From positions 27,263 to 91,262 of the forward strand of contig NW_021832847.1 in assembly GCF_006345805.1 (NCBI RefSeq): 64,000 nucleotides of DNA, in the 5' to 3' direction. The DNA comes from Octopus sinensis (Eukaryota). Positions 829 to 56,000 of the stretch are shown here, piece after piece. The number at the start of each line of letters is the position of its first letter. The stretch's first letter is position 1. The position numbers were made by a program, and so were the translations under genes. The notes under the pieces are model-generated. The model worked only from the letters and a program-made list of their open reading frames with translations. It did not search any database and was not told the origin of the DNA.

Positions 829-920
829 CGTACAGCTCTTTGTCCGGTTACATATCTCCCTGGGACTCGTCAGACCGGAATTATTAGCCAGATTCTCGCC
901 CCAGACATAGTTTTCATCAT
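829..920 (-). CDS. PANK4: PANK4 coding exon 9 (DENYVWGENLANNSGLTSPREICNRTKSCT); gene continues beyond the left edge
   Basis: Y.WGEN.A..SGL linker is characteristic of PANK4 and absent from PANK1-3. TCTCAG acceptor; GTACAT donor chosen for phase 0 (donor less certain). Confidence 0.88.
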
Positions 921-2614: not shown

Positions 2615-3452
2615 TGTTTTAAATCCTGGTTTTGTCCCTGTTAATGGAAGTGGTCGGATCTACCTCAATACCATAGCAACTGAGGCAGCCAGGTGCAGCC
2701 CACCCCAACCTTTGGGCTGGCTGGTGCTTATTCTCCCTTGTTGTCCTAAGGCGTTTTTGGAGCTGGATTTCCTACGGGGATCATGCCCTTGCTTACCCCC
2801 AACCTCAGTTTCTAGACAGCCGCCCCGACTGGCCTCTGTGCCGGTGGCACGTAAAAGTACCATCCGTTCGTGTCCGTTGCCAGCCTCGCCTGGCCCCCAT
2901 GCTGGTGGCACGTAAAAGCACCATCCGTTCGTGTTCGTTGCCAGCCTCGCCTGGCCCCCATGCCGGTGGCACGTAAAAGCACCATCTGTTCGTGGCCGTT
3001 TGCCAGCACCGTCTGGCACCTGTGCGGGTGGCACGTAAAAAGCACCCACTATACTCGCGGAGTGGTTGGCGTTAGGAAGGGCATCCAGCCGTAGAAACAC
3101 TGCCAGATCAGACTGGAGCCTGGTGCAGCCTCCTGGCTTCCCAGACCCCAGTTAAACCGTCCAACCCATGCTAGCATGGAAAACGGACGCTAAATGATGA
3201 TGATGATGATGATGATGATGAGTGATCCCGAGACCAAGGCCTCTCTACTACGATTTTTAAGGAATGTGGTGGAAAGCTAGCTCAAGGAGGCAGGGACCTA
3301 CAATGTGAATTTTCTGATTGCCAATGAGAAAGGGCAATCAGAAAATTTATCCCAATAAATTTTATACAACCCATGGAAACATGGATGTCATGATGATGAT
3401 GATGATGATGATAATGATGATCTCAACATATAAACAATCAGATCTGACTTAC

Positions 3453-3534
3453 CATCTTCTTCTGCACCAATGAGGAAAGATCCGACGGCACCAAGGTAAC
3501 CTTCGTGTCGAAGAAACAACGCTTCAGTCTTTGT
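3453..3534 (-). CDS. PANK4: PANK4 coding exon 8 ([27 protein letters not shown])
   Basis: [13 protein letters not shown] hallmark motif. CTAG acceptor, GTAAGT donor; 82 nt. Confidence 0.96.
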
Positions 3535-4500: not shown

Positions 4501-4527
4501 AGCAGCAATAATAGATAGTCCAGTTGT

Positions 4528-5187
4528 AATAAAGAAATAGGTATTTCGTCTGCCGCTACGTTCTGAGTTCAAATTCTGCCAAGGTTGACTTTGCCTTTCA
4601 TCCTTTTGGGGTCGATTAAATAGGTTCCAGTTACGCACTGGAGTTGATGTAATCAACTTAATACATTTATCTGTCCTTGTTTGTCCCCTCTAAGTTTAAC
4701 CCCTAGTGGGTAATAAAGAAATAGGTATTTCGTCTGCCGTTACGTTCTGAGTTCAAATTCCGCTGAGGTCGACTTTGCCTTTCATCCTTTCGGGGGTCGA
4801 TTAAATAAGTACCAGTTATGCACTGGAGTTGATGTAATCAACTTAATACATTTATCTGTCCTTGTTTGTCCCCTCTAAGTTTAACCCCTAGTGGGTAATA
4901 AAGAAATAGTATTTCGTCTGCCGTTACGTTCTGAGTTCAATTCCGCTGAGGTCGACTTTGCCTTTCATCCTTTCGGGGGTCGATTAAATAAGTACCAGTT
5001 ATGCACTGGAGTTGATGTAATCACTTAATACATTATCTGTCCTTGTTTGTCCCCTCTAAGTTTAACCCCTAGTGGGTAATAAAGAAATAGGTATTTCGTC
5101 TGCCGTTACGTTCTGAGTTCAAATTCCGCTGAGGTCGACTTTGCCTTTCATCCTTTCGGGGGTCGATTAAATAAGTACCAGTTACGT
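4528..5187 (+). repeat. Tandem multimer (about 3.6 x 183 bp) of a SINE 3' part
   Basis: AATAAAGAAATAG junctions at 4528, 4712, 4897 and 5078. The unit contains GACTTTGCCTTTCATCCTTTCGGGGTCGAT. Confidence 0.85.
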
Positions 5188-5403: not shown

Positions 5404-5594
5404 CTTGGACCAATATTTGATGGAACCGCTGAGTATGTGCATGGTCAGCGGGTTGCTGCGGATGAATCCGCCACCAAAGTAGATCTTATTGCAGTGATGT
5501 AGTTCTGCATAGAGGGATGAAATCTGTCCGATGTCGTTGCAGATAAGAAAGAGGAGGCTGGAGATTGCATCGGCCGACTTGTAATTTGCATCAT
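5404..5594 (-). CDS. PANK4: PANK4 coding exon 7 (DANYKSADAISSLLFLICNDIGQISSLYAELHHCNKIYFGGGFIRSNPLTMHILSGSIKYWSK)
   Basis: NDIGQ and YFGG.FIR..P.TM motifs. CTAG acceptor, GTGAGT donor; 191 nt, phase 1 to 0. Confidence 0.95.
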
Positions 5595-7035: not shown

Positions 7036-7198
7036 CTGTTATGTCGTGTCTCAGGTAAGGGGCTTTACCAAAGCTACTAGCCAGAAGTTCGGCAGGTAAG
7101 TTAAGGGCTGTGGTATTCAATCCATAGATGTCCTTCACCAACATATCCACATTTTGGCTGTTGCCCTCTTCAGCCAGAAGCAGCAACTCATTAAAGCT
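7036..7198 (-). CDS. PANK4: PANK4 coding exon 6 (SFNELLLLAEEGNSQNVDMLVKDIYG...LLASSFGKAPYLRHDIT)
   Basis: NVDMLV.D.YG and ASSFGK motifs. GTGAGT donor; weak AAG acceptor; 163 nt. Confidence 0.93.
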
Positions 7199-9044: not shown

Positions 9045-9465
9045 TCATGGCAGCGAGCTGGCGGAAACGTTAGCACGCCGGGCGAAATGCTTAGCGGTAT
9101 CTCGTCTGCCGTTACATTGTGAGTTCAAATTCCGCCGGGGTCGACTTTGCCTTTCATCCTTTCGGGGTCGATAAATTAAGTACCAGTTACGCACTGGGGT
9201 CAATGTAATCGACTTAATACCTATGTCTGTCCTTGTTTGTCCCCTCAATGTTTAGCCCCTTGTGGGCAGTAAAGAAATAGGTATTTTGTCTGCCGTTACG
9301 TTCTGAGTTCAATTTCCACTGAGGTCGACTTTGCCTTTCATCCTTTCGGGGTCGATAAATTAAGTACCAGTTACACACTGGGGTCGATGTAATCAACTTA
9401 ATACCTATGTCTGTCCTTGTTTGTCCCCTCTATGTTTAGCCCCTTGTGGGTAATAAAGAAATAGG
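9045..9465 (+). mobile_element. SINE with head plus two tandem ~184-bp bodies (same family as 4528-5187)
   Basis: Head TGGCAGCGAGCTGGCGGAAACGTTAGC, then repeated GGTAT..GTCTGCCGTTAC units at about 9096 and 9281. Confidence 0.8.
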
Positions 9466-9683
9466 TTGTCATGGTCTGAAGTACTTTTTATTCAGAATTG
9501 CTGCCCTTCCAGACAATTCCGAGGACTGCATCTTACTCGTGCATTCCAATTTCAAACATAGTTCTATAGCTAAATGCTCTTCCTTACATTGACCACTTTA
9601 CAGTGAGCAATAGGTGTATTTTACTGTGGCACCAACACTAGGAGGGTGCCATGAACAGCAAACAAAAACAAACCAATCATTAC

Positions 9684-9776
9684 CTTTCCTTTGGTAAGTA
9701 ATGAACCAAGACCCCAAAAAGTGGCGCCGCCAGTGGCTGTTCCTCCGACCCATTCGTATTTATTCTCGGATTCAAC
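9684..9776 (-). CDS. PANK4: PANK4 coding exon 5 (VESENKYEWVGGTATGGATFWGLGSLLTKGK)
   Basis: GG.TFWGLG.LLTK motif. Polypyrimidine CTAG acceptor, GTAATG donor; 93 nt. Confidence 0.95.
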
Positions 9777-10544: not shown

Positions 10545-11810
10545 TGTGATCCCTGTGCAGGTAGCACGTAAAAAGCACCATCTGAACGTGGCCGTTGCCA
10601 GCCTTCTCTGGCCCCTGTGCCGGTAGCACATAAAAAGCACCATCTGAACGTGGCCAATGCCAGCACCGCCTTGACTGGCTTCCGTGCCGGTAGCACATAA
10701 AAAGCACCATCTGAACGTGGCCGTTGCCAGCCTTCTCTGGCCCCTGTGCCGGTAGCACGTAAAAAGCACCATCTGAACGTGGCCAATGCCAGCCTTCTCT
10801 GGCCCCTGTGCCAGTAGCACATAAAAAGCACCATCTGAACGTGGCCAATGCCAGCCTTCTCTGGCCCCTGTGCCAGTAGCACATAAAAAGCACCATCTGA
10901 ACGTGGCTGTTGCCAGCCTTCTCTGGCCCCTGTGCCGGTAGCACATAAAAAGCACCATCTGAACATGGCCGATGCCAGCCTTCTCTGGCCCCTGTGCCGG
11001 TAGCACATAAAAAGCACCATCTGAACGTGGCCGATGCCAGCCTTCTCTGGCCCCTGTGCCGGTAGCACATAAGAAGCACCAGCTGAACGTGGCCGTTGCC
11101 AGCCTTCTCTGGCCCCTGTGCCGGTAGCACATAAAAAGCACCATCTGAACATGGCCGATGCCAGCCTTCTCTGGGCCCTGTGCCGGTAGCACATAAAAAG
11201 CACCATCTGAACGTGGCCAATGCCAGCCTTCTCTGGCCCCTGTGCCGGTAGCACATAAAAAGCACCATCTGAACATGGCCGATGCCAGCCTTCTCTGGGC
11301 TCTGTGCCGGTAGCACATAAAAAGCACCATCTGGACGTGGCCGATGCCAGCCTTCTCTGGCCCCTGTGCCGGTAGCACATAAAAAGCACCAGCTGAACGT
11401 GGCCAATGCCAGCCTTCTCTGGCCCCTGTGCCAGTAGCACATAAAAAGCACCATCTGAACGTGGCCAATGCCAGCCTTCTCTGGCCCCTGTGCCAGTAGC
11501 ACATAAAAAGCACCATCTGAACGTGGCCAATGCCAGCCTTCTCTGGCCCCTGTGCCGGTAGCACATAAAAAGCACCATCTGAACGTGGCCAATGCCAGCC
11601 TTCTCTGTCCCCTGTGCCAGTAGCACATAAAAAGCACCATCTGAACGTGGCCAATGCCAGCCTTCTCTGGCCCCTGTGCCAGTAGCACATAAAAAGCACC
11701 ATCTGAACGTGGCCAATGCCAGCCTTCTCTGGCCCCTGTGCCGGTAGCACATAAAAAGCACCATCTGAACGTGGCCGATGCCAGTGCCGCCTTGACAGGC
11801 TTCTGTGCCA
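10545..11810. repeat. 62-bp minisatellite, about 20 copies, inside the SINE-like element
   Basis: Unit GTAGCACATAAAAAGCACCATCTGAACGTGGCCAATGCCAGCCTTCTCTGGCCCCTGTGCCG. The 62-aa periodicity in all three minus-strand frames equals 3 units. Confidence 0.92.
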
Positions 11811-12229: not shown

Positions 12230-13310
12230 AGAAGTGGGGTAGAGTGGTGGGCAGAGGAATTATGCTGTGGGCAGAGTCATGTGGTGGGATAGCGTGAAGA
12301 GCAGAGGAGTCACATAGTAGGCAAATATGCCATGTGATGGGTAGAGGAGTCATATAGTGGACAGAGGAGTCGTGTAGTGGGCAAATATGCCATGTGATGG
12401 GTAGAGGAGTCATATAGTGGGTAGGGCAGAGGAGTCATGTAGTGGACAGAGGAGTCGTGTAGTGAGCAAATATGCCATGTGATGGGTAGAGGAGTCATAT
12501 AGTGGGTAGGGCAGAGGAGTCATGTAGTGGACAGAGGAGTCATGTAGTGGGTAGAGGAGTCGTGTAGTGGGCAAATATGCCATGTGATGGGTAGAGGAGT
12601 CATATAGTGGGTAGGGAAGAGGAGTCATGTAGTGGACAGTGGAGTCATGTAGTGGGTAGAGGAGTCATGTAGTGGGCAAATATGCCATGTGATGGGTAGA
12701 GGAGTCATAGTGGGTAGGGCAGAGGAGTCATGTAGTGGACAGAGGAGTCGTGTAGTGGGCAAATATGCCATGTGATGGGTAGAGGAGTCATGTAGTGGGT
12801 AGGGCAGAGGAGTCATGTAGTGGACAGAGGAGTCATGTAGTGGGTAGAGGAGTCATGTAGTGGGCAAATATGCCATGTGATGGGTAGAGGAGTCATATAG
12901 TGGGTAGGGCAGAGGAGTCATGTAGTGGACAGAGGAGTCGTGTAGTGGGCAAATATGCCATGTGGTGGGTAGAGGAGTCATATAGTGGGTAGGGCAGAGG
13001 AGTCATGTAGTGGACAGAGGAGTCGTGTAGTGGGCAAATATGCCATGTGATGGGTAGAGGAGTCATATAGTGGGTAGGGAAGAGGAGTCATGTAGTGGAC
13101 AGAGGAGTCGTGTAGTGGGCAAATATGCCATGTGATGGGTAGAGGAGTCATAGTGGGTAGGGCAGAGGAGTCATGTAGTGGACAGAGGAGTCGTGTAGTG
13201 GGCAAATATGCCATGTGATGGGTAGAGGAGTCATGTAGTGGGTAGGGCAGAGGAGTCATGTAGTGGACAGAGGAGTCATGTAGTGGGTAGAGGAGTCATG
13301 TGATGAGCAG
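12230..13310. repeat. Modular purine-rich minisatellite
   Basis: Shuffled modules AGAGGAGTCATGTAGTGG, GCAAATATGCCATGTGATGGGT and GGGTAGGGC. Confidence 0.9.
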
Positions 13311-13372
13311 AGGAGGTGTGTGGTGACCAGTGGGGTAGTGTGACATCAACAAAAAAAAACTCTGAAACTGAC

Positions 13373-13556
13373 CTTGGTAATAATTACACCGGAGCCAATG
13401 TTGACCAGCAAGAAAGGATAAAGGATCGAGTCGACTCCTTGGAACTTACACTCAGGATCTTGGTATCTTTGGAAAATAAAGGCCTCATCTGGAATGTTCT
13501 TCAACAGGAAATTACAGCCCTTAATTAGGCAATTCACTTCATTTTCCATTAAAAGT
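13373..13556 (-). CDS. PANK4: PANK4 coding exon 4 ([26 protein letters not shown]...[16 protein letters not shown])
   Basis: CLIKGCNF and [10 protein letters not shown] motifs. TACAG acceptor, GTCAGT donor; 184 nt, phase 2 to 0. Confidence 0.95.
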
Positions 13557-15218: not shown

Positions 15219-15430
15219 TCTAGACCTAATTTCTTCTCAATAAGATCCTTGTGCTTCCAGGAACCCCCACCTGTAGCCTTAATACTTTTGGTCTTCAGGG
15301 CATTGGTACTCTTGAGAAGATTCTCTTGTATGTAATCAATGCAGGTTTCGATATATTTTGTTTCAAATTGAATGAAATATAGACGTGGGACATACTCATC
15401 GGTTTCTGAGACTTCATAGATACTGGTGGA
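15219..15430 (-). CDS. PANK4: PANK4 coding exon 3 (STSIYEVSETDEYVPRLYFIQFETKYIETCIDYIQENLL...IKATGGGSWKHKDLIEKKLGL)
   Basis: Manual translation (not in the ORF track) shows RL.FI.FE..YIE.C and ATGGG motifs of type II PanK. TACAG acceptor, GTAAGT donor; 212 nt, phase 0 to 2. Confidence 0.93.
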
Positions 15431-16164
15431 CTGTAAAATAAGCAGAAATTAATACAATAAGATAAGAATTTATGATTCGAAATTGAACCAATCCTATGAC
15501 TGGCACCCGGCAGATGCCAGGACCCCTGGACTGGAGATATGTAAAAAGCACTATCCGAATCGTGGCCGATGCCAGCGCCGCCTCGACTGGCTTCCGTGTC
15601 GGTGGCACGTAAAAAGCACCATCCGAATCGTGGCCGAAGCCAGTGTCGCCTCGACTGGCTTCCGTGTCGGTGGCACGTAAAAAGCACCATCCGAATCGTG
15701 GCCGAAGCCAGTGCCGCCTCGACTGGCTTCCGTGTCGGTGGCACGTAAAAAGCACCATCCGAATTGTGGCCGAAGCCAGTGCCGGTGGCACGTAAAAAGC
15801 ACCATCCGAATCGTGGCCGAAGCCAGTACCGCCTCGACTGGCTTCCGTGTCGGTGGCACATAAAATGCACCAATCCGACCGTGGCCGATGCCAGCCTCGC
15901 CTGGCACCAGTGCAGGTGGCACGTAAAAAGCACCCACTACACTCACGGAGTGGTTGGCGTTAGGAAGGGCATCCAGCTGTAGAAACATTGCCAGATAAGA
16001 CCGGAGCCTGGTGCAGCCTTCTGGCTTCCCAGATCCCCGGTCGAACCGTCCAACCCATGCTAGCATGGAGAATGGACGTTAAACGATGATGATGATGATG
16101 ATGAAATACAGTTGTGTATTCAAAGCGATGAGGAATTATTCAAAAAATACCTTAGGAATGAGAA

Positions 16165-19415: not shown

Positions 19416-19495
19416 CTTGTTGGGCACTTCCTCGGATACTAAGAATGATTTCTGATGAACCAGAGAACAGTAAGCAATTTTGGCTAAAGAACCTC
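19416..19495 (-). CDS. PANK4: PANK4 coding exon 2 (GGSLAKIAYCSLVHQKSFLVSEEVPNK)
   Basis: T-rich TGCAG acceptor and GTGAGT donor. Completes the DIGGS..K phosphate-binding loop across the junction; 80 nt. Confidence 0.92.
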
Positions 19496-21818: not shown

Positions 21819-22008
21819 CAATATCTATGGCAATGCGCTGCGCATTCTTCAGATTCTTGAAGACTTTCTCGGATGGCAACTCAATTGGTTTGGTTTGTAC
21901 GGATTCTTCCTGTCTTTGCAACCATGACGACGATGACGACGTTGATGATGCTACTGATGATGATGATGATTCTGCGTTCCCATTGTTATCCTTTTCGTTA
22001 GCTGACAT
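21819..22008 (-). CDS. PANK4: Pantothenate kinase 4, first coding exon (MSANEK...NLKNAQRIAIDI/G)
   Basis: ATG at 22008. The translation matches the PANK4 N-terminus (IELPSEKVFKNLKNAQRIAIDIG vs [21 protein letters not shown]). GTAAGT donor at 21818-21813; 190 nt, phase 1. Confidence 0.93.
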
Positions 22009-32592: not shown

Positions 32593-33814
32593 CTAGCAGA
32601 ATTGCCCGGCGTTGTTCGGGGCTGAATTGCTTGAAAGTACTGTTAATGATTGCACTGAATTATGATGATTATTTAGGCAAATATTGATATAAGTTTACGG
32701 TGGGAGATAAGGACTTAACGATCAAACGTGTGCCATTGCATTGTTTTGCGGGAACCAAATTTCTGATGAGCATTATAGTGGCACCAACTTTAAGTGTGAG
32801 AAGTGTGGTGGTAGTTCGGGGTGCTCAAAGGAATTGAGTACCTCTATTGGATAGTTGATGACGTCCTCTGGGTCAGGAGTTGTATCGATAGACTGATATA
32901 CATAGACTTCCCCAGGAATGAGTTTTAGCATTTCATCATTAATATGGTGAACAGTTTTATTCCTCGGGGCCAGTATAGCCTTTTTGCCAATCCAATCCAT
33001 ATTCTGATAATTAGCTTGTAGATCTGGGAACACTGTATCTCTGAGATCAGGAGGCGTCTTAACAATGGTACAAATGGAATCGATGGCAATATTACCATTT
33101 TCATCCCCTGGTATTTTGCCTTCGCCAAGTGCAAGGAGGGTGTGAGGAAATGCTGCTGATGTGATATTACGTCGCATATGAGCACGCATATTGGTGTGAA
33201 GTTTGAGTGTTACTTCCCTTTTATTAAAAAAAATATGCATTAAAATGGAAAAAAATGATGGTAAATTATTTGTAAAATCGTAGACTCATCATAGACGCGC
33301 GCTAATACCCAGAAGGGCTCGATATGAATCACGACTATAAGATACCCGGTTTTGGTTAAACTGCATCGCAAAATGTGGGAGTAGTTAGGAATCTAAATCG
33401 GAGTAGACAGACACACAACCTTTCTTTTATATATAAAGATTTTCGTCCGTCCTAAAAAACTTTGTGCGGAGTGAATGGTTACCTCTATGGAAATATATAC
33501 ACACACATTATACATACATGTGTGTATAGATGAATATATAAATACATTTAAATATCTATATACACTTTTGGGCGATCTTTCTGCTACTTGGATATACTTT
33601 AGATCTTATATTCGTCCAATTCGTCCTAAATAACTTTGTATGGAGTGAATGGTTACATCTATGGAAATATATACACACACATTATACATACATGTGTGTG
33701 TCTATATACACTTTTGGACGACTGCTACTTAGAGATAACTTTAGAAGTTAGGTGATCTAGCAAAAAGGATGACCAGTTTGACTTGCTCATCCCTGTCACA
33801 CACTCACACACACG

Positions 33815-37383: not shown

Positions 37384-39633
37384 CTAGCAGAATTGCCCGG
37401 CGTTGCTCGGGGCTGAATTGCTTGAAAGTACTGTTAATGATTGCACTGAATTATGATGATTATTCAGGCAAATATTGATATAAGCTTACGGTGGGAGATA
37501 AGGACTTAACGATCAAACGTGTGCCATTGCATTGTTTTGGGGGAACCAAATTTCTGATGAGCATTATAGGGGCACCAACTTTAAGTTTGAGAAAGTGTGG
37601 TGGTAGTTCGGGGTGCTCAAAGGAATTGAGTACCTCTATTGGATAGTTGATGACGTCCTCTGGGTCAGGAGTTGTATCGATAGACTGATATACATAGACT
37701 TTCCCAGGAATAGATTTTAGCATTTCATCATTAATATGGTGAACAGTTTTTATTCCTCGGGGCCAGTATAGCCTTTTTGCCAATCCAATCCATATTCTGA
37801 TAATTAGCTTGTAGATCTGGGAACACTGCATCTCTGAGATCAGAAGGCGTCTAACAATGGTACAAATGGAATCGATGGCAATATTACCATTTTCATCCCC
37901 TGGTATTTTGCCTTCGCCAAGTGCAAGGAGGGTGTGAGGAAATGCTGCTGATGTATATTACGTCGCATATGAGCACGCATATTGGTGTGAAGTTTGAGAG
38001 TTACTTCCGTTTATTTTAAAATATGCATTAAAATGGAAAAAAATGATGGTAAATTATTTGTAAAATCATAGACTCATCGTAGACGCGCGCTAATACCCAG
38101 AAGGGCTCGATATGAATCACGACTATAAGGTACCCGGTTTTGGTTAAACTGCATCGCAAAATGTGGGAGTAGTTAGGAATCTAAATCGGAGTAGACAGAC
38201 ACACAACCTTTCTTTTATTATAAATATTTTCGTCCTAAAAAACTTTGTATGGATTGAATGGTTACCTCTATGGAAATATACACGCACATTATACATACAT
38301 GTGTGTATAGATGAATATATAAATACATTTAAATATCTATATACACTTTTGGGCGATCTTTGTTTCTTAGAGATAACTTTAGATCTTATTTTCGTCCTAA
38401 AAAACTTTGTATGGAGTGAATGGTTACCTCTATGGAAATATATACACACACGTTATACATACATGTGTGCATAGATGAATATATAAATACATTTATATAT
38501 CTACATACACTTTTGGGCGATCTCTGTGCTACTTAGAGATAACTTTAGATCTTATTTTCGTCCTAAAAAACTTTGTGCGGAGTGAATGGTTACGTGTATG
38601 GAAATATATACACACACATTATACATACATCTGTGTATAGATGAATATATAAATACATTTAAATATCTATATACACTTTTGGGCGATCTTTCTGCTACTT
38701 GGATATAGGGGTGATGTTTCGCTTGTCGTAGCACACGTTTCCGTCGATTTGCGTAAAAAATGTAAACACTGAATCGGCCATACATACATACATACACACA
38801 CACATACATACACACACACACACATACATGCATACATACATATACACATAAACCGAGTAAAAATTTCAGTTATCTCTCTCTTTCACACATTACTCTCTCT
38901 GTCTCTTCACACACACTAACAGAAGCACTTCACTTACACAGCATACGGTCTGTCTCCCACACTCCATCAAACACACACACACACACACATGTACATCAAT
39001 GCGTCCCATGCACGGTAACTTCAAAAGAACTTCCCTCGTCATACAATCGCTTTCTCTTAGTCTCTTTCGCTCTCATTACTTATGTAAAAAATAAAAGTTT
39101 TTTACGGAAATCGACGGAAACCTGTGCTACGACAAGCGAAACATCGCCGATATAGGTCTTATATTCGTCCTAAAAAACTTTCCTGTCACCCTCACGCACA
39201 CGCACACAACACACACCACACACACAACACACACACGCACCCTCACACACACGCACACACACACTCACACACACGCAACCGCGCTTACAATTTTATTTAT
39301 ATATTTGCGTGTCTATGTGTGTAAAGAGGAAGTGGAAGACTGAAGAGTCACTCACTACCAAAGGTGAATTACTTTCATTTTTTTCTTTGCACACTTTGTG
39401 TGTGCGTGTGCGTGTGGTGTAAACCACATTAAGAAAAGCATTTGACATACACACCAGAATGTGAGTTTTCTGTAATTTGCTTAATTGGAGTTTAAATTTT
39501 AAAAAGTGGACCTGGCAAAAACCGATGCATTCTACTCTTAAAAATGCTAAGTAAATTGTAATTGAAGAAATCCTATTGTAGATTTCTATAACTGACAAAG
39601 GGAGGCAGATAAAATCTGCCTTTTATAATAAGA
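37384..39633 (-). mobile_element. Helitron H4 (type A, helicase fragment 37460-37990, internal ~165-bp tandem repeats)
   Basis: Same termini and helicase fragment as H1 and H7. Confidence 0.88.
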
Positions 39634-42961: not shown

Positions 42962-43867
42962 CACATATATATATATATATATATATAATGTGTGCATTAC
43001 GTAGTCGGTAGATTCAGCTGAAAATATACATACCTATGTTAAAAGTGCTGGCAAGTTTGCATGACAACTATTTTTTTCCTCAAATGAAAGGTGTCACCTC
43101 TAGGACAAAATTCCTCATCTTATAAAATGTGGCCCCAGTAGACCCGAATGAAATCGGGTTATGTTAACCAAAATGTGAAAAGGGGTCTAAATGGGGCTGG
43201 AATGGATTAAAATTTAAAGGAGCGGGTGTTTAGGAATTCTCTGTTACATCAAGCTAAAATTTGCGCCGGCCTTTTATCGTCATGTGTTACCGTCCATGAT
43301 AAAGAGTCCATGATAAAGTCCATGGTGAGTCTACTGTCGTGAGAAAGAATCACTTCAAAACTTGGTGTTTACGAATTTTCTTTTACATCAAGTTCAAAAT
43401 TTTACGCCAGTCGTTAAACTGTCACTACGTTGCTGTCCGTCGTTAAGAAATGCCAGCCATGGTGACTCTACTATCCTCAGATTCTATCCCTTCAAACTTT
43501 GGTTTCCAATATTTTATTATTTTTCTTCAGCTCGCAAGTCCGTCTGTCCCTTTTAAATGTTAGCATTTTGCTGTCTGCCTTAAAGCAGACTTTTCCATTA
43601 TCACTGCCTCATATTTCTGATTGATCTTTCTGAATATTTTATTTCTCAACTTACTCAAGATCTTCTGTTGTTTACAAATGGGAGAGAGATAGATGGAGAT
43701 AGAGAGTAAGAGAAAGCGAGGAAGAGTCCGAAAGATAAGAAAACTAAGAGAGTGGGAAAGTGAGAGAGAAAGGAGAGAGAAACAAATACGGAGAATCATC
43801 ATCATCATCATCGTTACACGTCCGTTTTCCGTGCTAGCAAGGGTTGGACAGTGTATACATTGTATAC

Positions 43868-43919
<52 letters not shown>

Positions 43920-44029
43920 ATATATATATATATATAAATATAAAATATATAATTTTATACATTTATATAAAATATATCAAAATATATATATGTATATATA
44001 TATATCTATATATATAATAAATATATATA

Positions 44030-47000
44030 ATTGTATACATTTATATATATATATAAAATGTATATATATATGTATATATATATAAATATATATAATTTGT
44101 ATACATTATATATATATAATATATATAATTTGTATACATTTAATATATATACATATATATAATTTGTATACATTTATATACATATATATAATTTGTATAC
44201 ATTTATATACATATATATAATTTGTATGCATTTATATACATATATAAAATTTGTATACGTTTATATACATATATATAATTTCTATACATTTCAATACATA
44301 TATATAATTTGTATACGTTTACATACATATATATAATTTGTATAAGTTTATATACATATATATAATTTGTATACGTTTATATACATATATATAATTTGTA
44401 TACATTTATATACATATATATAATTTGTATATATTTATATACATATATATAATTTGTATACATATATATAATTTGTATATATTTGTATACATATATATAA
44501 TTTGTATATATTTGTATACACATATATAATTTGTATATATTTGTATACATATATATAATTTGTATACATATATATAATTTGTATATATTTGTATACATAT
44601 ATATAATTTGTATATATTTATGTAGATATATATAATTTCTATATATTTATATACATATATATAATTTGTATATATTTGTATACGTAAATATAATCTGTAT
44701 ATATTCGTATACGTATATATAATTTGTATACATTTATATACATATATATAATTTGTATACATTTATATACATATATATAATTTGTATACATTTATATACA
44801 TATATATAATTTGTAAACATTTATATACATATATATAAATTGTATACATTTATATACATATATATAATTTGTATACACTTATATACATATATATAATTTG
44901 TATACATATGTATAATTTGTATATATTTATATACATATATATAATGTGTATATATTTGTATACATATATATAATTTGTATATATTTGTGTACATATATAT
45001 AATTTGTATATATTTGTGTACATATATATAATTTGTATATATTTGTGTACATATATATAATTTGTATATATTTGTGTAAATATATATAATTTGTATATAT
45101 TTACGTACATGTATATAATTTCTGTATATTTATATACATATATTTAATTTGTATATATTTATATACATATATATAATTTGTATAGATTTATATACATATA
45201 TATAATTAGTATATATTTATATACATATATATAATTAGTATATATTTATATACATATATATAATTTGTATATATTCATATCCATATATATAATTTGTATA
45301 TATTCATATACATATATATAATTTGTATATATTCATATACATATATATAATTTGTATATGTTCATATACATATATATAATTTGTATATATTCATATACAT
45401 ATATATAAATTGTATATATTCATATACATATATATAATTTGTATATATTCATATACATATATATCATTTGTATATATTCATATACATGTATATAATTTGT
45501 ATATATTCCTATACATATATATAATTTGTATATATTCCTATACATATAAATAATTTGTATATATTCATATACATATATAAAATTTGTATATATTCATATA
45601 CATATATATAATTTGTATGTGTTCATATACATATATAAAATTTGTATATATTCATATACATGAATATAATTTGTATATATTCATATACATATATACAATT
45701 TGTATATATACATATACATATATATAATTTGTATATATTCATATACATATATATAATATGTATATATTTATATATATAATCTGTATATATTCAGATACAT
45801 AATTGGTATATATTCATATACATATATATAATCTGTATATGTATTCATATACATATATATAATTTGTATATATTCATATACATATATATAATTTGTATAT
45901 ATTCATATACATATATATAATTTGTATATATTCATATACATATATATAATTTGTATATATTCATATACATGATCGGTATATATTCATATACATATATATA
46001 ATCTGTATACGTATTCATATACATATATATAATTTGTATATATTCATATAAATATATATAATTTGTATATATTCATATAAATATATATAATTTGTATATA
46101 TTCATATACATATATATAATCTGTATATGTTCATATACATAATCGGTATATATTCATATACATATATATAATCTGTAATTGTATTCATATACATATATAT
46201 AATTTGTATATATTCATATACATATATATAATTTGTATATATTCATATACAAATATATAATTTGTATATATTTATATACATATATATAATTTGTATATAT
46301 TTATATATATGTGTATAAATATATACAAATTATATATATAATTATATATAATTTGTATACATTTATATACAAATATATAATTTGCATACGTTTATATACA
46401 AATATATAATTTGTATACGTTTATATACATATATATAATTTGCATACGTTTATATACATATATATAATTTGTATACGTTTCTATACATATATATAATTTG
46501 TATACGTTTATATACATATATATAATTTGTGTACGTTTATATACATATACATAATTTATATACATATATATAATTTGTATACATATATATAATCTATATA
46601 TGTTTGTATACGTATATATAATTTGTATATATTTGTATGCATATATATAATTTGTAATTATTTGTATGCATATATATAAATTGTATATATTTATATGCAT
46701 ATATATAATTTGTATATATTCATATACATATATATAATTTGTATATCTTCATATACAGATATATAATTTGTATATCTTCATATACAGATATATAATTTGT
46801 ATATATACATATACATATATGTAATTTGTATATATTCATATACATATATGTAATTTGTACATCTTCATATACATATATGTAATTTGTATATCTTCATATA
46901 CATATATATAATTTGTATGTATTCATATACATATAAATAATTTGTATATCTTCATATACATATATATAATTTGTATGTATTCATATACATATATATAATT

Positions 47001-50000
47001 TGTATATATACATATACATATATGTAATTTGTATATATTCATATACATATATGTAATTTGTATATCTTCATATACATATATGTAATTTGTATATCTTCAT
47101 ATACATATATGTAATTTGTATATATTCATATACATATATGTAATTTGTATATATTCATATACATATATATAATTTGTATATATTCATATACATATATATA
47201 ATTTGCATATAAACATATACATATATATAATTTGTATATATTCATATACATATATATACTTTGTATATATTCATATACATATATATAATTTGTATATATT
47301 CATATACATATATATAATTTATATATATTCATATACATATATATAATCTGTATATATTCATATACATATATATAATCTGTATATATTCATATACATATAT
47401 ATAATCTGTATATCTTCATATACATACATATAATCTCTATATATTCAAATATATAATCTGTATATATTCATATACATAATCGGTATATATTCATATACAT
47501 ATATATAATCTGTATATATATTCATATACATATATATAATTTGTATATATTCATATACATATATATAATTTGTATATATTCATATACATATATATAATTT
47601 GTATATATTCATATACATATATATAATTTGTATATATTCATATACATATATATAATTTGTATATATTCATATACAAATATATAATTTGTATATATTCATA
47701 CACATATATATAATTTGTATATATTTATATATATGTATATAAATATATACAAATTATATATATAATTATATATAATTTGTATACATTTATATACAAGTAT
47801 ATAATTTGTATACGTTTATATACAAATATATAATTTGTATATGTTTATATACATATATATAATTTTATACGTTTATATACAAATATATAATTTGTATACA
47901 TTTATATACATATATATAATTTGTATACGTTTATATACATACTAGCAGAATTGCCCGGCGTTGTTCGGGGCTGAATTGCTTGAAAGTACTGTTAATGATT
48001 GCACTGAATTATGATGATTATTCAGGCAAATATTGATATAAGCTTACGGTGGGTGATAAGGACTTAACGATCAAACGTGTGCCATTGCATTGTTTTGGGG
48101 GAACCAAATTTCTGATGAGCATTATAGGGGCACCAACTTTAAGTTTGAGAAAGTCTGGATGTAGTCCGGGGTGCTCAAAGGAATTGAGTGCCTCTATTGG
48201 ATAGTTGATGACGTCCTCTGGGTCAGGAGTTGTATCGATAGACTGACATACATAGACTTCCCTAGGAATGAGTTTTAGCATTTCATCATTAATATGGTGA
48301 ACAGTTTTATTCCTCAGGGCCAGTATAGCCTTTTTGCCAATCCAATCCATATTCTGATAATTAGCTTGTAGATCTGGGAACACTGCATCTCTGAGATCAG
48401 AAGGCGTCTTAACAATGGTACAAATGGAATCGATGGCAATATTACCATTTTCATCCCCTGGTATTTTGCCTTCGCCAAGTGCAAGGAGGGTGTGAGGAAA
48501 TGCTGCTGATGTGATATTACGTCGCATATGAGCACGCATATTGGTGTGAAGTTTGAGAGTTACTTCCGTTTATTTTAAAAATATGCATTAAAATGGAAAA
48601 AAATGATGGTAAATTATTTGTAAAATCATAGACTCATCGTAGACGCGCGCTAATACCCAGAAGGGCTCGATATGAATCACGACTATAAGATACCCGGTTT
48701 TAGTTAAACTGCATCGCAAAATGTGGGAGTAGTTAGGAATCTAAATCGGAGTAGACAGACACACAACCTTTCTTTTATATATAAATATTTTCGTCCTAAA
48801 AAACTTTGTATGGATTGAATGGTTACCTCTATGGAAATATATACACGCACATTATACATACATGTGTGTATAGATGAATATATAAATACATTTAAATATC
48901 TATATACACTTTTGGGCGATCTTTCTGTTTCTTAGAGATAACTTTAGATCTTATTTTCGTCCTAAAAAACTTTGTATGGAGTGAATGGTTACCTCTATGG
49001 AAATATATACACACACGTTATACATACATGTGTGCATAGATGAATATATAAATACATTTATATATCTATATACACTTTTGGGCGATCTCTGTGCTACTTA
49101 GAGATAACTTTAGATCTTATTTTATGTCCTAAACAACTTTGTGCGGAGAGAATGGTTACGTGTATGGAAATATATACACACACATTATACATACATCTGT
49201 GTATAGATGAATATATAAATACATTTAAATATCTATATACACTTTTGGGCGATCTTTCTGCTACTTCGATAAAGGGGCGATGTTTCGCTTGTCGTAGCAC
49301 ACGTTTCCGTCGATTTGCGTAAAAAATGTAAACACTGAATCGGCCATACATACATACATACACACACACATACATACACACACACACACACATACATGCA
49401 TACATACATATACACATAAACCGAGTAAAAAATTTCAGTTATCTCTCTCTTTCACACATTACTCTCTCTGTCTCTTCACACACACTAACAGAAGCACTTC
49501 ACTTACACAACATACTGTCTGTCTCCCACACTCCATCAAACACACACACACACACACACATGTACATCAATGCGTCCCATGCACGGTAACTTCAAAAGAA
49601 CTTCCCTCGTCATACAATCGCTTTCTCTTAGTCTCTTTCGCTCTCATTACTTATGTAAAAAATAAAAGTTTTTTACGGAAATCGACGGAAACCTGTGCTA
49701 CGACAAGCGAAACATCGCCGATATAGGTCTTATATTCGTCCTAAAAAACTTTCCTGTCACACACTCACGCACACGCACACACACACACACACACACAAAC
49801 ACACACACGCACCCTCACACACACGCACACACACACTCACACACACGCACGTTAGCTTACAATTTTATTTATATATTTGCGTGTCTATGTGTGTAAAGAG
49901 GAAGTGGAAGACTGAAAGAGTCACTCACTACAAAAGGTGAATTACTTTCATTTTATTCTTTGCACACTGTGTGTGTGCGTGTGCGTGTGGTGTAAACCAC

Positions 50001-53000
50001 ATTAAGAAAAGCATTTGACATACACAGCGGAATGTGAGCTTTCTGTAAATTTTGCTTAATTGGAGTTTAAATTTTAAAAAGTGGACCTGGCAAAACCCGA
50101 TGCATTCTACTCTTAAAAATGCTAAGTAAATTGTAATTGAAGAAATCCTATATTGTAGATTTCTATAACTGACAAAGGGAGGCAGATAAAATCTGCCTTT
50201 TATAATAAGAGATATATAATTTGTATACGTTTATATACATATATATAATTTATATACTTATATATAATTTGTATATATTTGTATAGATATATATAATTTG
50301 TATGTATTTGTATGCATATATATAATTTGTATATTTGTATGCATATATATAATTTGTATATATACATATGCATAGATATATTTTGTATATATTTATATGC
50401 ATATATATAATTTGTATATATTCAAATACATATATATAATTTGTATATATTTATATGCATATATATAATTTGTATATATTTGTATGCATATATATAATTT
50501 GTATATATTTATATGCATATATATCATTTGCATATATTTATATGCATATATATAATTTGTATATTTTTATATGCATATATATAATTTGTATATATTTATA
50601 TGCATATATATAATTTGCATATATTAATATGCATATATATAAATTGTATATATTCATATACATATATATAATTTGTATATATTCATATACGTATATATAA
50701 TTTGTATATCTTCATATACATATATATAATTTGTATATCTACATATACATATATATAATTTGTATATCTTCCTATACGTATATATAATTTGTATATATTT
50801 GTATACATATATATAATTTGTATATCTTAATATACATATATGTAATCTGTGTATCCTCATATACATATATATAATTTGTATATCTTCCTATACATATATA
50901 TAATTTGTATATATTCATATACATATATATAATTTGTATATATTCATATACATATATGTACTTTGTATATCATCATATTCATATATGTAATTTGTATATC
51001 TTCATATACCTATATGTAATTTGTATATTTTCATATACATATATGTAATTTGTATATATTCATATACATATATGTAATTTGTATATCTTCATATACATAT
51101 ATGTAAGTTGTATATCTTCATATACATATATATAATTTGTATATCTTCATATACCTATATGTAATTTGTATATCTTCATATACATATATGTAATTTGTAT
51201 ATCTTCATATACATATATGTAATTTGTATATCTTCATATACATATATGTAATTTGTATATCTTCATATACATATATGTAATTTGTATATATTCATATACA
51301 TATATGTAATTTGTATATATTCATATACATATCTGTAATTTGTATATATTCATATACATATATGTAATTTGGATATATTCATATACATATATGTAATTTG
51401 TATATATTCATATACATATATGATTTGTATATTTTCATATACATATATGTAATCTGTATATATTCATATATATATATATATAATCTGTATATATTCATAT
51501 ACATATATATAATCTGTATATATTCATATACATATATATAATCTGTATATATTCATATACATATATATAATCTGTATATATTGATATACATATATATAAT
51601 CTGTATATATTCATATACATATATATAATTTGTATATATTCATATACATATATATATGTATATATTCATATACATATAATTTGTATATAAACATATACAT
51701 ATATATAATTTGTATATATACATATACATATATAATTTGTATATTTTCATATGCATATATATAATTTGTGTATGTACATATACATATATAGAATTTGTAT
51801 ATATTCATATACATATATATAATTTGTATATATTCCTATACATATATATAATTTGTATATATACATATACATATATATAATTTGTATATATTCATATACA
51901 TATATATAATTTGTATATATACATATACATATATATAATTTGTATATATTCATATACATATATATAATCTCTATATATTCATATACACATATATATTCTG
52001 TATATATTCATATACGTATATATAATTTGTATATATTCATATACATACATATAATCTCTATAAATTCATATATATAATCTGTATATAATCATATACATAT
52101 ATATAATCTCTATATATATTCATATACATATATATAATATGTATATATTCATATACATATATATAATTTGTATATATTCATATACATATATATATTTTGT
52201 ATATATTCATATACGTATATATAATTTGTATATATTTATATATATATGTATATAAATATATACAAATTATATATATAATTATATATAATTTGTATACGTT
52301 TATATACAAATATATAATTTGTATACGTTTATATACATATATATAATTTTATACGTTTATATACAAATATATAATTTGTATACATTTATATACATATATA
52401 TAATTTGTATACGTTTATATACATATATATATAATTTGTATACGTTTATATACATATATATAATTTATATACATATATATAATTTGTATATATTTATATA
52501 CATATATATAATTTGTATGTATTTGTATGCATATATATAATTTATATATATTTCTATGCATATATATAATTTATATATATTTATAGGCATATATATATCT
52601 TGTATATATTTATATGCATTTATATAATTTGTATATATACGATTGCATATATATAATTTGTATATATTTATATGCATATATATAATTTGTATATATTTGT
52701 ATGCATATATATAATTTGTATATATTTATATGCATATATATAATTTGTATATATTCATATACATATATATAAGTTGTATATATTCACATACGTATATATA
52801 AGTTGTATATATTCATATACATATATATAATTTGTATATATTCATATACACATATATAATTTGTATATCTTCATATACATATATATTATGTACATATTCA
52901 TATACATATATATAACTTGTATATTTCATATACATATATATAATTTCTATATATTCATATACATATATGTACTTTGTATATTTTCATATACATATATGTA

Positions 53001-56000
53001 ATTTGTATATCTTCATATACATATATGTAATTTGTATATATTCATATACATATATGAAATTTGTATATATACATATACATATATGTAATTTGTACATCTT
53101 CATATACATATATATAAGTTGTATATATTCATATACATATATGTAATTTGTATATATTCATATACATATATGTAATTTATATATCTTCATATGCATATAT
53201 ATAATTTGTATATCTTCATATACATTTATGTAATTTGTATATCTTCATATACATATATGTAATTTGTATATCTTCATATACATATAAGTAATTTGTATAT
53301 CTTCATATACATATATATACTTTCTATGTCTTCATATACATATATGTAATTTGTATATGTTCATATACATATATGTAATTTGTATATATTCATATACATA
53401 TATATAATCTCTTTATATCCATATACACATATATAATCTGTACATATTCATATACATATATATAATCTGTATATATTCATATACATATATATAATCTGTA
53501 TATATTCATATACATATATATAATCTGTATATATTCATATACAAATATATAATCTGTATATATTCATATGCATATATATAATCTGTATATATTCATATAC
53601 ATATATATAATCTGTGTATATTCATATACATATATATAATCTATATATATTCATATACGTATATATAATATGTATATATTCATATACATATATATAATCT
53701 GTATATATTCATATACATATATATAATCTATATTCATATACATATATATAATCTGTATATATTCATATACGTATAAATAATCTGTATATATTCATATACA
53801 TACATATATTCTCTATAAATTCATATATATAATCTGTATATAATCATATACATATATATAATCTGTATATATATTAATATACATATATATAATATGTATA
53901 TATTCATATACATATATATAACTTGAATATATTCATATACATATATATAATTTGTATATATTCATATACGTATATATAATTTGTATATATTTATATATAT
54001 GTATATAAATATATACAAATTATATATATAATTATATATAATTTGTATACATTTATATACAAATATGTAATTTGTATACGTTTATATACAAATATATAAT
54101 TTGTATACGTTTATATACATATATATAATTTTATACGTTCATATACAAATATATAATTTGTATACATTTATATACATATATATAATTTGTATACGTTTAT
54201 ATACATATATATAATTTATATACATGTCTATAATTTGTATATATTTATATACATATATATAATTTGTATGTATTTGTATGCATATGTATAATTTATATAT
54301 ATTTGTATGCATATATATAATTTGTATATATTTATAGGCATATATATATTTTGTATATATTTATATGCAGTTATATAATTTGTATATATTCAAATGCATA
54401 TATATAATTTATATATATTTGTATGCATATATATAATTTGTATATATTTATAGGCATATATATATATTGTATATATTTATATACATTTATGTAATTTGTA
54501 TATATTCAAATGCATATATATAATTAGTATATATTTATATGCATATATATAATTTGTATATATTTGTATGCATATATATAATTTGTAAATTTTTTTATGC
54601 ATATATATAATTTGCATATATTTATATGCATATATACAATTTGCATATATTTATATGTATATGTAACATTTGTATATATTTATATGCATCTATATAATTT
54701 GTATATGTTCATATGCATATATGTAATTTGTATATATTCATATACATATATATAAGTTGTATATATTCACATACATATATATAAGTTGTATATATTCACA
54801 TACATATATATAATTTGTATATATTCATATACGTATATATAATCTATATATATTCATAAACATACATATATGTATATGAAAATATGCAAATTACATATAT
54901 GTATAAGAAAATATGCAAATTACATATATGTATATGAAAATATACAAATTATATATATGTATATGAAAATATGCAAATTATATATATGTATATGAAAATA
55001 TGCAAATTACATATATGTATATGAAAATATGCAAATTATATATATGTATATGAAAATATGCAAATTACATATATGTATATGAAAATATGCAAATTATATA
55101 TATGTATATGAAAATATGCAAATTATATGTATGTATATGAAAAGATGCAAGTTACATATATGTATATGAAACTATGCAAATTATATATATGTATATGAAA
55201 ATATGCAAATTATATATATGTATATGAAAATATGGAATTCATATATATGCATACAAATTATATATATGTATATAAATGTATACAAATTATATATATGTAT
55301 ATGAAATTATGCAAAGTACATATATGTATATGAAAATATGCAAATTATATATATGTATATGAAAATATGCAACTTATATATATGTATATGAAAATATGCA
55401 AATTACATATATGTATATGAAAATATGCAAATTATATATATGTATATGAAAATATGCAAATTATATGTATGTATAATAAAATATGCAAATTATATATATG
55501 TATATGAAAATATGCAATTTATATATATGCATACAAATTATATATATGTACATAAATGTATACAAATTATATATATGTATATGAAAATATGCAACTTATA
55601 TATATGTATATGAAGATAACCAATTCATATATATGCATACAAATTATATATATGTATATAAATGTATACAAATTATATATATGTATATAAACGTATACAA
55701 ATTATATATATGTATATACACGTATACAAATTAAATATATGTATATAAACGTATACACATTGTATATTTGTATATAAATATATACAAAATATATATAATT
55801 ATATATACAATTGTATATATTTATATACATATATATAATATATACAAATATATATAGTATAATAAATATATACAAATATATATATGTATATAAATATAAA
55901 CAAATTATATATTTGTACGAATATATACAAGTTATATATATGTATATGGATATATACAAATTATATATATGTATATGGATATATACAAATTATCTATATG

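What the first reader, a model, noticed from the sequence alone, without database searches (positions are those of the whole stretch)
9735..9755. PANK4 has Trp at the catalytic Arg site but keeps the catalytic Glu: possible independent pseudokinase origin
Seen: exon 5 encodes KYEWVGGTATGGATFW (TGG at 9752-9750) and exon 4 encodes MENEVNC (GAA at 13540-13538). Established: active type II PanKs need a Glu (PANK3 E138, ..DELDC) and an Arg (PANK3 R207, YKRVTGTSLGGG). Human PANK4 has Val and Trp at these sites, is kinase-dead, and acts through its C-terminal phosphatase domain; that loss is regarded as amniote-specific. Inference: this invertebrate gene has the same Arg-to-Trp change (CGG to TGG, a CpG transition) plus a GGG to GGA loop change. 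This suggests convergent inactivation, caught with the Glu still present. A-to-I editing cannot restore Arg.
Basis: partly seen in the sequence, partly recalled or inferred. Interest (0 to 1): 0.75.

Follow-up and report, generated by a model that had tools for sequence, protein, structure and literature searches.

The report
Second, independent dead-kinase PANK4
A cephalopod-like PANK4 gene carries the same Arg-to-Trp change that helped kill the kinase half of human PANK4, plus several other active-site losses, so this enzyme domain seems to have been switched off twice in animal evolution.

Summary
Nine canonical GT-AG exons on the minus strand (22008 to about 829) encode the PanK-like N-terminal half of a PANK4 orthologue. 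TGG at 9752-9750 aligns to PANK3 Arg207, and GAA at 13540-13538 aligns to Glu138.

Among the 120 best PANK4 homologues, every amniote has Val+Trp. Every non-amniote has Glu+Arg: six molluscs, insects, a spider, a crinoid, a coral, fishes, amphibians, sharks. Only the window has Glu+Trp, so the Trp is derived and arose independently of amniotes.

It is not an isolated change. The window also has Ser195Ile, Tyr258Thr, Gly256Leu, Gly216Ala and Asp137Asn. It deviates at 15 of 119 near-invariant columns, against 0-3 for most good gene models and 2-6 for amniotes. Its lineage also carries about twice as many unique changes as other molluscs. ATP-binding glycine motifs, Glu138 and Tyr254 are kept.

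The best reading is an old, independently evolved pseudo-pantothenate kinase.

Not supported: the CGG-to-TGG CpG route (relatives use AGA or CGT) and the idea that the loss was "caught" early.

Not testable here: read support, fixation across cephalopods, the DUF89 half (outside the window), and enzyme activity.

The parts
21819..22008 (-). Exon 1: ATG, Ser-rich N-terminal extension, start of the PanK-like domain (...RIAIDIG)
   Evidence: ORF and GT donor; tblastn with Haliotis and Mactra PANK4
19416..19495 (-). Exon 2: GSLAKIAY... (phosphate-binding DIGGSLxK motif completed across the splice junction)
15219..15430 (-). Exon 3: ...KATGGGSWKHKDLIEKKLGLE (ATGGG motif kept)
13373..13556 (-). Exon 4: MENEVNC...[13 protein letters not shown]. 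Asn166 (AAT 13543-13541, at PANK3 Asp137), Glu167 (GAA 13540-13538, at Glu138), Ile219 (ATT 13384-13382, at Ser195)
9684..9776 (-). Exon 5: VESENKYEWVGGTATGGATFWGLGSLLTKGK. Trp231 (TGG 9752-9750, at Arg207), Ala240 (GCC 9725-9723, at Gly216). The intron position in front of this exon is the same in Elysia, Mercenaria, Mytilus and Gryllus.
7036..7198 (-). Exon 6: ...VKDIYGLNTTALNLPAELLASSFGK... Tyr278 (at Tyr254, kept), Leu280 (TTG 7120-7118, at Gly256), Thr282 (ACC 7114-7112, at Tyr258), Leu292/Ala293 (at Val268/Ala269)
5404..5594 (-). Exon 7: ...NDIGQISSLYAELHHCNKIYFGGGFIRSNPLTMHILSGSIKYWSK. Gly350 sits where other PANK4s have Tyr/Phe.
3453..3534 (-). Exon 8: end of the PanK-like domain ([16 protein letters not shown]...)
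829..920 (-). Exon 9: PANK4-type linker (DDENYVWGENLANNSGL...). The 3' boundary is uncertain (weak GTACAT donor). The DUF89 exons lie beyond window coordinate 1.

Best explanation
The window holds the 5' half of the PANK4 orthologue (4'-phosphopantetheine phosphatase with an N-terminal type II PanK-like domain) of a cephalopod-like mollusc. In this lineage the PanK-like domain lost the pantothenate-binding and catalytic constellation independently of amniotes. Arg207 became Trp, Ser195 became Ile, and the Asp137-Tyr258' pair was lost on both sides (Asn, Thr). Gly256 became Leu and Gly216 became Ala. The fold, the ATP-binding glycine motifs, Glu138 and its partner Tyr254 were kept. The domain is therefore most likely a pseudo-pantothenate kinase. 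It would serve as a structural, dimerising or regulatory module for the C-terminal DUF89 phosphatase, as in human PANK4, while real pantothenate phosphorylation is done by a PANK1-3/fumble-type enzyme encoded elsewhere. Shown: gene model, residue identities, their derived state, accelerated divergence. Inferred: loss of kinase activity, phosphatase-centred function, presence of DUF89 and of another PanK in the genome.
For: The gene model has nine canonical exons and an open frame. The Pfam Fumble match covers the full profile (388 bits, positions 2-333 of 334). The AF2 model (pLDDT 78) matches yeast CAB1 and human PANK1-3 structures at E about 1e-25 to 1e-29. Almost all of the best 120 homologues are named PANK4 or are PanK+DUF89 fusions; one is a plant PanK. 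The exon-5 intron position and the linker motif are conserved. Amniotes all have Val/Trp, all other animals have Glu/Arg, and the window has Glu/Trp. Trp is otherwise unique to amniote PANK4 among 150 cluster representatives. Literature lists Glu138, Ser195 and Arg207, plus Val268'/Ala269', as the pantothenate contacts, and Asp137-Tyr258' and Glu138-Tyr254' as stabilising pairs. The window has lost Ser195, Arg207, Tyr258 and Asp137. It deviates at 15 of 119 near-invariant columns, against 0-3 for most good models and 2-6 for amniotes. Three of the 6 conserved pantothenate-site residues are lost, against 12 of 113 other conserved columns (Fisher p=0.026). Tajima relative-rate tests give 55 versus 26 unique changes against Haliotis (p=0.001), similar to human versus Xenopus at 25 versus 9. 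Glu138Val and Arg207Trp are the accepted cause of PANK4 kinase inactivity in amniotes.
Against: The catalytic base Glu138 and all ATP-site glycine motifs remain, so phosphotransfer is not formally excluded. No close relative (cephalopod PANK4) could be retrieved, so fixation of Trp and of the other changes in the lineage is unverified. No reads or RNA-seq were available. The DUF89 half is outside the window. The faster rate could partly reflect lineage-wide rates rather than relaxed constraint on this domain.
Confidence: 0.7

Rival explanations
1. The domain is still a working kinase, either on pantothenate through compensating residues or on a different substrate without a carboxylate (for example pantetheine or a related metabolite). 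The reshaped, more hydrophobic pocket (Trp, Ile, Leu, Thr) would then be a change of specificity rather than decay.
For: Glu138, Tyr254, DIGGSLxK, ATGGG and NIGSG are all retained. 104 of 119 near-invariant columns are kept. The changes are concentrated in the substrate pocket rather than the ATP site.
Against: The same Arg-to-Trp change is one of the two substitutions held responsible for dead human PANK4. Ser195 and Tyr258, which are conserved even in most amniote pseudokinases, are also lost. No positive evidence exists for any alternative substrate.
Confidence: 0.15
2. The TGG codon is an assembly or sequencing error, or a rare allele of the sequenced individual, and the species' PANK4 normally has Arg.
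For: No reads, transcripts or sister-species sequences could be examined.
Against: From the Arg codons seen in relatives (AGA, CGT), TGG needs two base changes. The codon sits among 14 other deviations at near-invariant positions spread over five exons, including Ser195Ile, Gly256Leu and Tyr258Thr. A single-base error cannot explain these.
Confidence: 0.07
3. The locus is a decaying or redundant PANK4 duplicate (unitary pseudogene in the making), and a second copy with an intact Arg exists elsewhere in the genome.
For: It has the longest branch of all animal PANK4s in the NJ tree (root-to-tip 0.93 against 0.71-0.81). Short teleost PANK4-like paralogues with a lost Arg207 show that such duplicates exist.
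Against: The reading frame is open through nine exons, with GT-AG at the eight splice junctions whose two sides lie in the window. Most conserved columns are retained. There is no second exon-5 copy in the window. The whole genome cannot be checked here.
Confidence: 0.08

Closest known systems
Amniote (human) PANK4, the pseudo-pantothenate kinase / 4'-phosphopantetheine phosphatase
   Same: It is an orthologous gene family (about 54% identity in the domain). It has the identical Arg207-to-Trp replacement in the same ...FEW[IV]GG... context. It shows accelerated evolution of the PanK-like domain. Tyr258 has also decayed in mammals (His) and in one bird (Cys).
   Different: Amniotes also have Glu138Val, whereas the window keeps Glu. 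The window additionally lost Ser195, Gly256, Gly216 and Asp137, which amniotes keep. The origin is independent, because all intervening lineages have Arg.
Invertebrate and anamniote PANK4 with an intact catalytic constellation (e.g. Haliotis, Mactra, Elysia, Gryllus, Xenopus, fish)
   Same: Same domain architecture as far as the window shows, same exon-5 intron position and linker motif, and 54-60% identity.
   Different: All of them have Asp137 (two invertebrates Asn), Glu138, Ser195 (one invertebrate Asn), Arg207 and Tyr258 (one invertebrate Cys), and 0-3 deviations at near-invariant columns.
Drosophila dPANK4 (CG5828)
   Same: Another protostome lineage in which PANK4 gave up the kinase part while keeping the phosphatase function (PMC13276073).
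   Different: The fly lost the whole PanK-like domain. The window keeps a full-length, well-folded domain with a degraded substrate site.
Human PANK3 / yeast CAB1 (active type II pantothenate kinases)
   Same: Same fold and ATP-binding motifs. Best solved-structure matches by sequence (E 1e-48 to 1e-57) and by fold.
   Different: These are active enzymes with Glu138, Ser195, Arg207 and Tyr258 intact and no DUF89 fusion.
Short teleost PANK4-like paralogues (P0126 Boleophthalmus, P0132 Periophthalmus, P0137 Aulostomus)
   Same: They keep Glu138 but replaced Arg207 and altered the GGG loop. This is the same 'Glu kept, Arg lost' pattern.
   Different: The replacement is Cys, His or Ser, not Trp. 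They are kinase-domain-only proteins of 343-367 aa, and they are vertebrate duplicates rather than the main orthologue.

Membership tests
Type II pantothenate kinase fold (Pfam Fumble, PF03630) | Full-length match to the family profile above the curated cut-off | tested here: met
   388.4 bits against a cut-off of 28.5, profile positions 2-333 of 334
Type II pantothenate kinase fold (Pfam Fumble, PF03630) | Three-dimensional similarity to solved type II PanKs | tested here: met
   AF2 model with pLDDT 77.9. Foldseek top hits are CAB1, PANK1, PANK2 and PANK3, E 1e-24 to 5e-29, TM about 0.65-0.77.
Catalytically active type II PanK | Catalytic base Glu138 (PANK3 numbering) | tested here: met
   Glu167, GAA 13540-13538
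Catalytically active type II PanK | Arg207 contacting pantothenate | tested here: not met
   Trp231, TGG 9752-9750
Catalytically active type II PanK | Ser195 contacting pantothenate | tested here: not met
   Ile219, ATT 13384-13382. Ser in 19 of 20 invertebrate PANK4s and in all 22 vertebrate PANK4s tabulated.
Catalytically active type II PanK | Asp137-Tyr258' active-site stabilising pair | tested here: not met
   Asn166 and Thr282. Roles of these residues are taken from the literature passage.
Catalytically active type II PanK | ATP/phosphate-binding glycine motifs (DIGGxLxK, ATGGG, NIGSG) | tested here: met
   DIGGSLAK, ATGGG and NIGSG are present
Catalytically active type II PanK | Measured pantothenate kinase activity | not testable with these tools
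   Needs a recombinant enzyme assay or complementation
PANK4 (PanK-like domain fused to a DUF89 phosphatase) | Closest relatives are PANK4 orthologues rather than PANK1-3/fumble | tested here: met
   Nearly all of the best 120 hits are named PANK4 or 4'-phosphopantetheine phosphatase; many carry PF03630+PF01937
PANK4 (PanK-like domain fused to a DUF89 phosphatase) | PANK4-type linker after the kinase domain (Y[SV]WGEN..SSGL) and shared intron positions | tested here: met
   Exon 9 reads DDENYVWGENLANNSGL. The exon-5 acceptor sits at the same codon in four relatives.
PANK4 (PanK-like domain fused to a DUF89 phosphatase) | C-terminal DUF89/ARMT1-like phosphatase domain with metal-binding Asp residues | not testable with these tools
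   The gene runs off the window at coordinate 1. tblastn finds no DUF89 exons in the window.
Amniote-type pseudo-PanK signature | Arg207Trp | tested here: met
Amniote-type pseudo-PanK signature | Glu138Val | tested here: not met
   Glu is retained

The most novel reading that the evidence does not exclude
The domain is not dead but re-tooled. It keeps the catalytic Glu and the ATP site while replacing the carboxylate-binding Arg/Ser with hydrophobic residues. It could therefore phosphorylate or sense a different pantothenate-related metabolite lacking the carboxylate (such as pantetheine). Alternatively, the recurrent Arg-to-Trp choice in amniotes and this lineage could reflect selection for a Trp-filled pocket that locks the pseudokinase in one conformation to control the DUF89 phosphatase.
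Probability: 0.12. Interest if true: 0.75.

Novelty: new variant of a known kind. Interest (0 to 1): 0.5.

Why it matters
Loss of PANK4 kinase activity is described in the literature as an amniote event (Dibble et al. 2022, PMC9352595). A second, independent loss that uses the very same Arg-to-Trp substitution but a different companion set (Ser195Ile, Tyr258Thr, Gly256Leu; Glu kept) would have three consequences. First, it would show that the PanK-like half of PANK4 is repeatedly dispensable as an enzyme yet retained as a domain. This fits with the fly having deleted it and with the preprint report that C. elegans pnk-4 knockouts are viable with unchanged CoA levels. Second, it gives a natural experiment for asking what the pseudokinase domain does for the phosphatase. 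Third, it helps separate which residues matter for catalysis (lost) from those that matter for structure or regulation (Glu138-Tyr254 pair and ATP motifs, kept).

Tried and rejected
**Search for close relatives.**
The best PANK4 hit is only 58% identical (Haliotis), and no cephalopod PANK4 was returned.
- Metagenome scans with the protein and with a degenerate exon-5 DNA pattern found nothing. Fixation of the Trp in the lineage therefore stays untested.

**Primary paper.** Yao et al. 2019 (10.1002/pro.3611, PMC6511746) is not held. Its claims are cited through Dibble 2022, Munshi 2022 and two preprints.

**Organism identity.**
- ARAGORN and Rfam gave no hits.
- An NJ tree of the domain puts the window on a long protostome branch, with only 12 of 200 bootstraps joining it to molluscs (a first attempt timed out).
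- The cephalopod assignment rests on Helitron/Pif1 fragments, whose best named hits are Octopus sinensis, O. bimaculoides and Acanthosepion.

**Alternative exon.** An alternative, mutually exclusive exon 5 carrying Arg is rejected for this window: tblastn at E<=10 finds no second copy.

**CpG-transition route.** This cannot be supported. Relatives use AGA (three) or CGT (one) at the codon. DNA for Haliotis, Pomacea, Mactra and Oculina could not be fetched.

**Numbering error.** A first PANK3 numbering run with --keeplength shifted positions (first table). It was redone.

Full report
**Observation.**
- Read on the minus strand, 9776-9684 encodes VESENKYEWVGGTATGGATFWGLGSLLTKGK, with TGG at 9752-9750.
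- 13556-13373 encodes ...[18 protein letters not shown]...[13 protein letters not shown], with GAA at 13540-13538.
- Both are flanked by AG and GT.
- phmmer against all PDB chains aligns the protein to yeast CAB1 (E 8e-57) and human PANK3 (E 1e-48). In the PANK3 alignment the Trp lies on the Arg of ...NYKRVTGTSLGGG... and the Glu on the Glu of ...LDELDC....
- Counting along the PANK3 chain and re-aligning confirms these as Arg207 and Glu138.

**Gene model.**
- Nine exons on the minus strand give an open frame of 429 codons that continues beyond the window. They are 22008-21819, 19495-19416, 15430-15219, 13556-13373, 9776-9684, 7198-7036, 5594-5404, 3534-3453 and 920 to about 829. All eight acceptors are AG. 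Eight donors are strong GT sites; the ninth, after exon 9, is a weak GTACAT and its position is uncertain.
- tblastn with Haliotis and Mactra PANK4 recovers exactly these nine pieces. It finds no second copy of exon 5 and no DUF89 exons.
- Exon 9 encodes the PANK4-type linker (DDENYVWGENLANNSGL). The phosphatase half must lie beyond coordinate 1.
- Pfam scores the protein as Fumble over the whole profile (388 bits).
- An AlphaFold2 model (pLDDT 78, pTM 0.75) matches CAB1 and PANK1-3 structures at E 1e-24 to 5e-29.
- The only low-confidence stretch is protein residues about 272-310. In PANK3 this is the loop that completes the partner subunit's pantothenate site.

**Whose gene.**
- The window is AT-rich (32% G+C) and full of tandem arrays and a 29-bp satellite.
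- Three Helitron/Pif1-like fragments have their best named matches in Octopus sinensis, O. bimaculoides and Acanthosepion pharaonis (50-72% identity).
- The best PANK4 matches are molluscs (Haliotis 58%).
- An NJ tree places the sequence on a long branch among protostomes without resolving its sister group.
- I therefore call it cephalopod-like, with moderate confidence.

**Is the Trp ancestral or derived?**
- I aligned the 120 best homologues.
- All 36 amniote sequences (lizards, snakes, birds, mammals including human) have Val at 138 and Trp at 207.
- All other animal sequences have Glu and Arg. These include six molluscs (Haliotis, Mactra, Elysia, Mercenaria, Mytilus, Pomacea), seven arthropods, a crinoid, a coral, and many teleosts, amphibians, sharks and rays.
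- The window alone is Glu+Trp.
- This reproduces the published statement that the PANK4 kinase domain was inactivated in amniotes (PMC9352595; residues named in PMC8861153). It also shows that the window's Trp is an independent, derived change.
- An exhaustive HMMER search of 1.84 billion cluster representatives returned 150 diverse type II PanKs. I aligned 141 new representatives together with twelve sequences fetched earlier and the window. Of these, 141 have Glu+Arg, and Trp occurs only in the two amniote PANK4 sequences added for comparison and in the window.
- Other replacements of Arg207 do exist: Thr, Phe and Ile in three representatives, and Cys, His or Ser in short teleost PANK4-like paralogues that also keep Glu138. 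Losing Arg while keeping Glu is therefore not unique, but Trp outside amniotes is.

**Is it only one residue?** No.
- The residue roles come from a passage quoted. Pantothenate contacts are Glu138, Ser195, Arg207, Val268' and Ala269'. Stabilising pairs are Asp137-Tyr258' and Glu138-Tyr254'.
- Against these the window reads as follows:
  - Asp137 to Asn.
  - Glu138 kept.
  - Ser195 to Ile. Ser is present in 19 of 20 invertebrate PANK4s and in all 22 vertebrate PANK4s tabulated, amniotes included.
  - Arg207 to Trp.
  - Gly216 to Ala.
  - Tyr254 kept.
  - Gly256 to Leu. Gly is present in 41 of the 42 sequences compared.
  - Tyr258 to Thr.
  - Val268 to Leu.
  - Ala269 kept.
- The site that is Tyr/Phe in other PANK4s (PANK3 Asn322) is Gly.
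- I took 119 columns that are at least 94% conserved in 20 invertebrate plus 12 anamniote PANK4s. The window deviates at 15 of them.
- In a leave-one-out control most sequences deviate at 0-3. The few high values (Anneissia 15, Mytilus 9, Ladona 8, Acipenser 8) may come from faulty gene models. For Mytilus I confirmed a frameshift in the model.
- Amniote pseudokinases deviate at only 2-6.
- Three of the six conserved pantothenate-site residues are lost, against 12 of 113 other conserved columns (Fisher p=0.026).
- The ATP-side motifs DIGGSLAK, ATGGG and NIGSG are intact.
- Tajima relative-rate tests give the window lineage about twice the unique changes of any other mollusc. Against Haliotis with a coral outgroup the count is 55 versus 26 (p=0.001). 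All 15 comparisons point the same way.
- The excess is similar to that of human, gecko or bird over Xenopus (19-25 versus 6-9). Two ordinary molluscs do not differ from each other.

**Interpretation.**
- The simplest reading is that this lineage long ago stopped using the PANK4 N-terminal domain as a pantothenate kinase.
- Selection kept the fold, the nucleotide-binding motifs and the Glu138-Tyr254 pair, but no longer kept the substrate pocket.
- That is the state described for human PANK4, reached by a partly different route.
- It fits a wider pattern. Drosophila PANK4 has lost the domain altogether (PMC13276073). A 2026 preprint argues that C. elegans pnk-4 does not act as a pantothenate kinase in vivo.
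- Mammalian PANK4 has also lost Tyr258 (His), and so has one bird (Cys). The same secondary site therefore decays after the primary loss in both lineages.

- The proposed CGG-to-TGG CpG transition is only a guess. At the orthologous codon Elysia, Mytilus and Gryllus use AGA and Mercenaria uses CGT. From these, TGG is two steps away.
- The loss does not look as if it was caught early. The number of co-occurring changes and the long branch argue for an old event.
- Glu138 is probably retained for a structural or regulatory reason rather than by accident of timing.
- Gly-Gly-Ala also occurs in a dragonfly PANK4 that keeps Arg, so it is not evidence of inactivation by itself.
- The editing remark is correct: TGG has no adenosine.

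**Limits.**
- I could not obtain any cephalopod PANK4, reads or transcripts.
- I cannot say whether the allele is fixed, whether a second copy exists, or whether the gene is expressed.
- A single-base error at the Trp codon would not change the conclusion, because the other substitutions are spread over exons 4, 5, 6 and 7.
- Kinase inactivity and the phosphatase function are inferred, not shown.

**Verdict.** The feature is real. It is a new, independently evolved variant of a known pseudoenzyme. It is of moderate interest for CoA-metabolism and pseudoenzyme evolution, and it is worth a small comparative and biochemical follow-up.

Noticed in passing
window 43860-47941 and 50212-64000: A 29-bp AT-rich satellite (TTGTATATATTTATATACATATATATAAT, about 140 and about 480 copies) fills roughly 18 kb of the window. 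A Helitron-like fragment interrupts it.
   Followed up: no
window 48021-48569(-), 37463-37957(-), 32776-33285(-): Three related Helitron/Pif1-helicase fragments. Two score as Pif1 2B domain in Pfam, and the best named relatives are Octopus and Acanthosepion proteins. This was the only clue to the source organism.
   Followed up: partly
window 10551-11784, 12301-13315 (intron 4); 1061-1417, 2839-3046, 15541-15894; 4526-5184, 9096-9466: PANK4 introns carry large tandem arrays: a 62-bp unit x20, a 20/85/105-bp array of about 1 kb, related 61-68-bp arrays, and 183-bp SINE-like repeats.
   Followed up: no
proteins P0126, P0132, P0137, P0139: Short (343-367 aa) teleost PANK4-like proteins (mudskippers, trumpetfish) lack DUF89 and keep Glu138. 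They have Cys, His or Ser at Arg207 and SGR/GGR instead of GGG. This looks like a further, apparently undescribed, loss of the catalytic Arg.
   Followed up: partly
proteins P0296, P0287, P0354: Three unnamed representatives of distant type II PanK clusters have Phe, Thr or Ile at Arg207. P0296 also lacks Asp137, Tyr254 and Tyr258. They may be additional pseudo-PanKs.
   Followed up: no
amniote PANK4 sequences, PANK3 position 258: Mammalian PANK4 has His, and one bird has Cys, at Tyr258. The window has Thr at the same position. This site seems to decay repeatedly once the kinase is dead.
   Followed up: partly
L003 8912-8995 (Mytilus coruscus PANK4 locus): The deposited Mytilus gene model (P0059) goes out of frame right after the GGG loop (GGG GAC ATT CTG GGG ACT TGG). 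This is probably a one-base assembly or annotation error, and it explains the model's many apparent deviations.
   Followed up: partly
window 13543-13541: The Asn codon at the Asp137 site is AAT. A-to-I editing of its first base would read as GAT (Asp). If the source is a coleoid cephalopod, this position could in principle be recoded, unlike the Trp codon. Pure speculation.
   Followed up: no
window 22008-21900 (exon 1): A Ser-rich, low-complexity N-terminal extension (MSANEKDNNGNAESSSSSVASSTSSSSSW...) precedes the PanK-like domain. Haliotis and Mactra PANK4 give no tblastn match to this part of exon 1 (their matches start at 21891).
   Followed up: no
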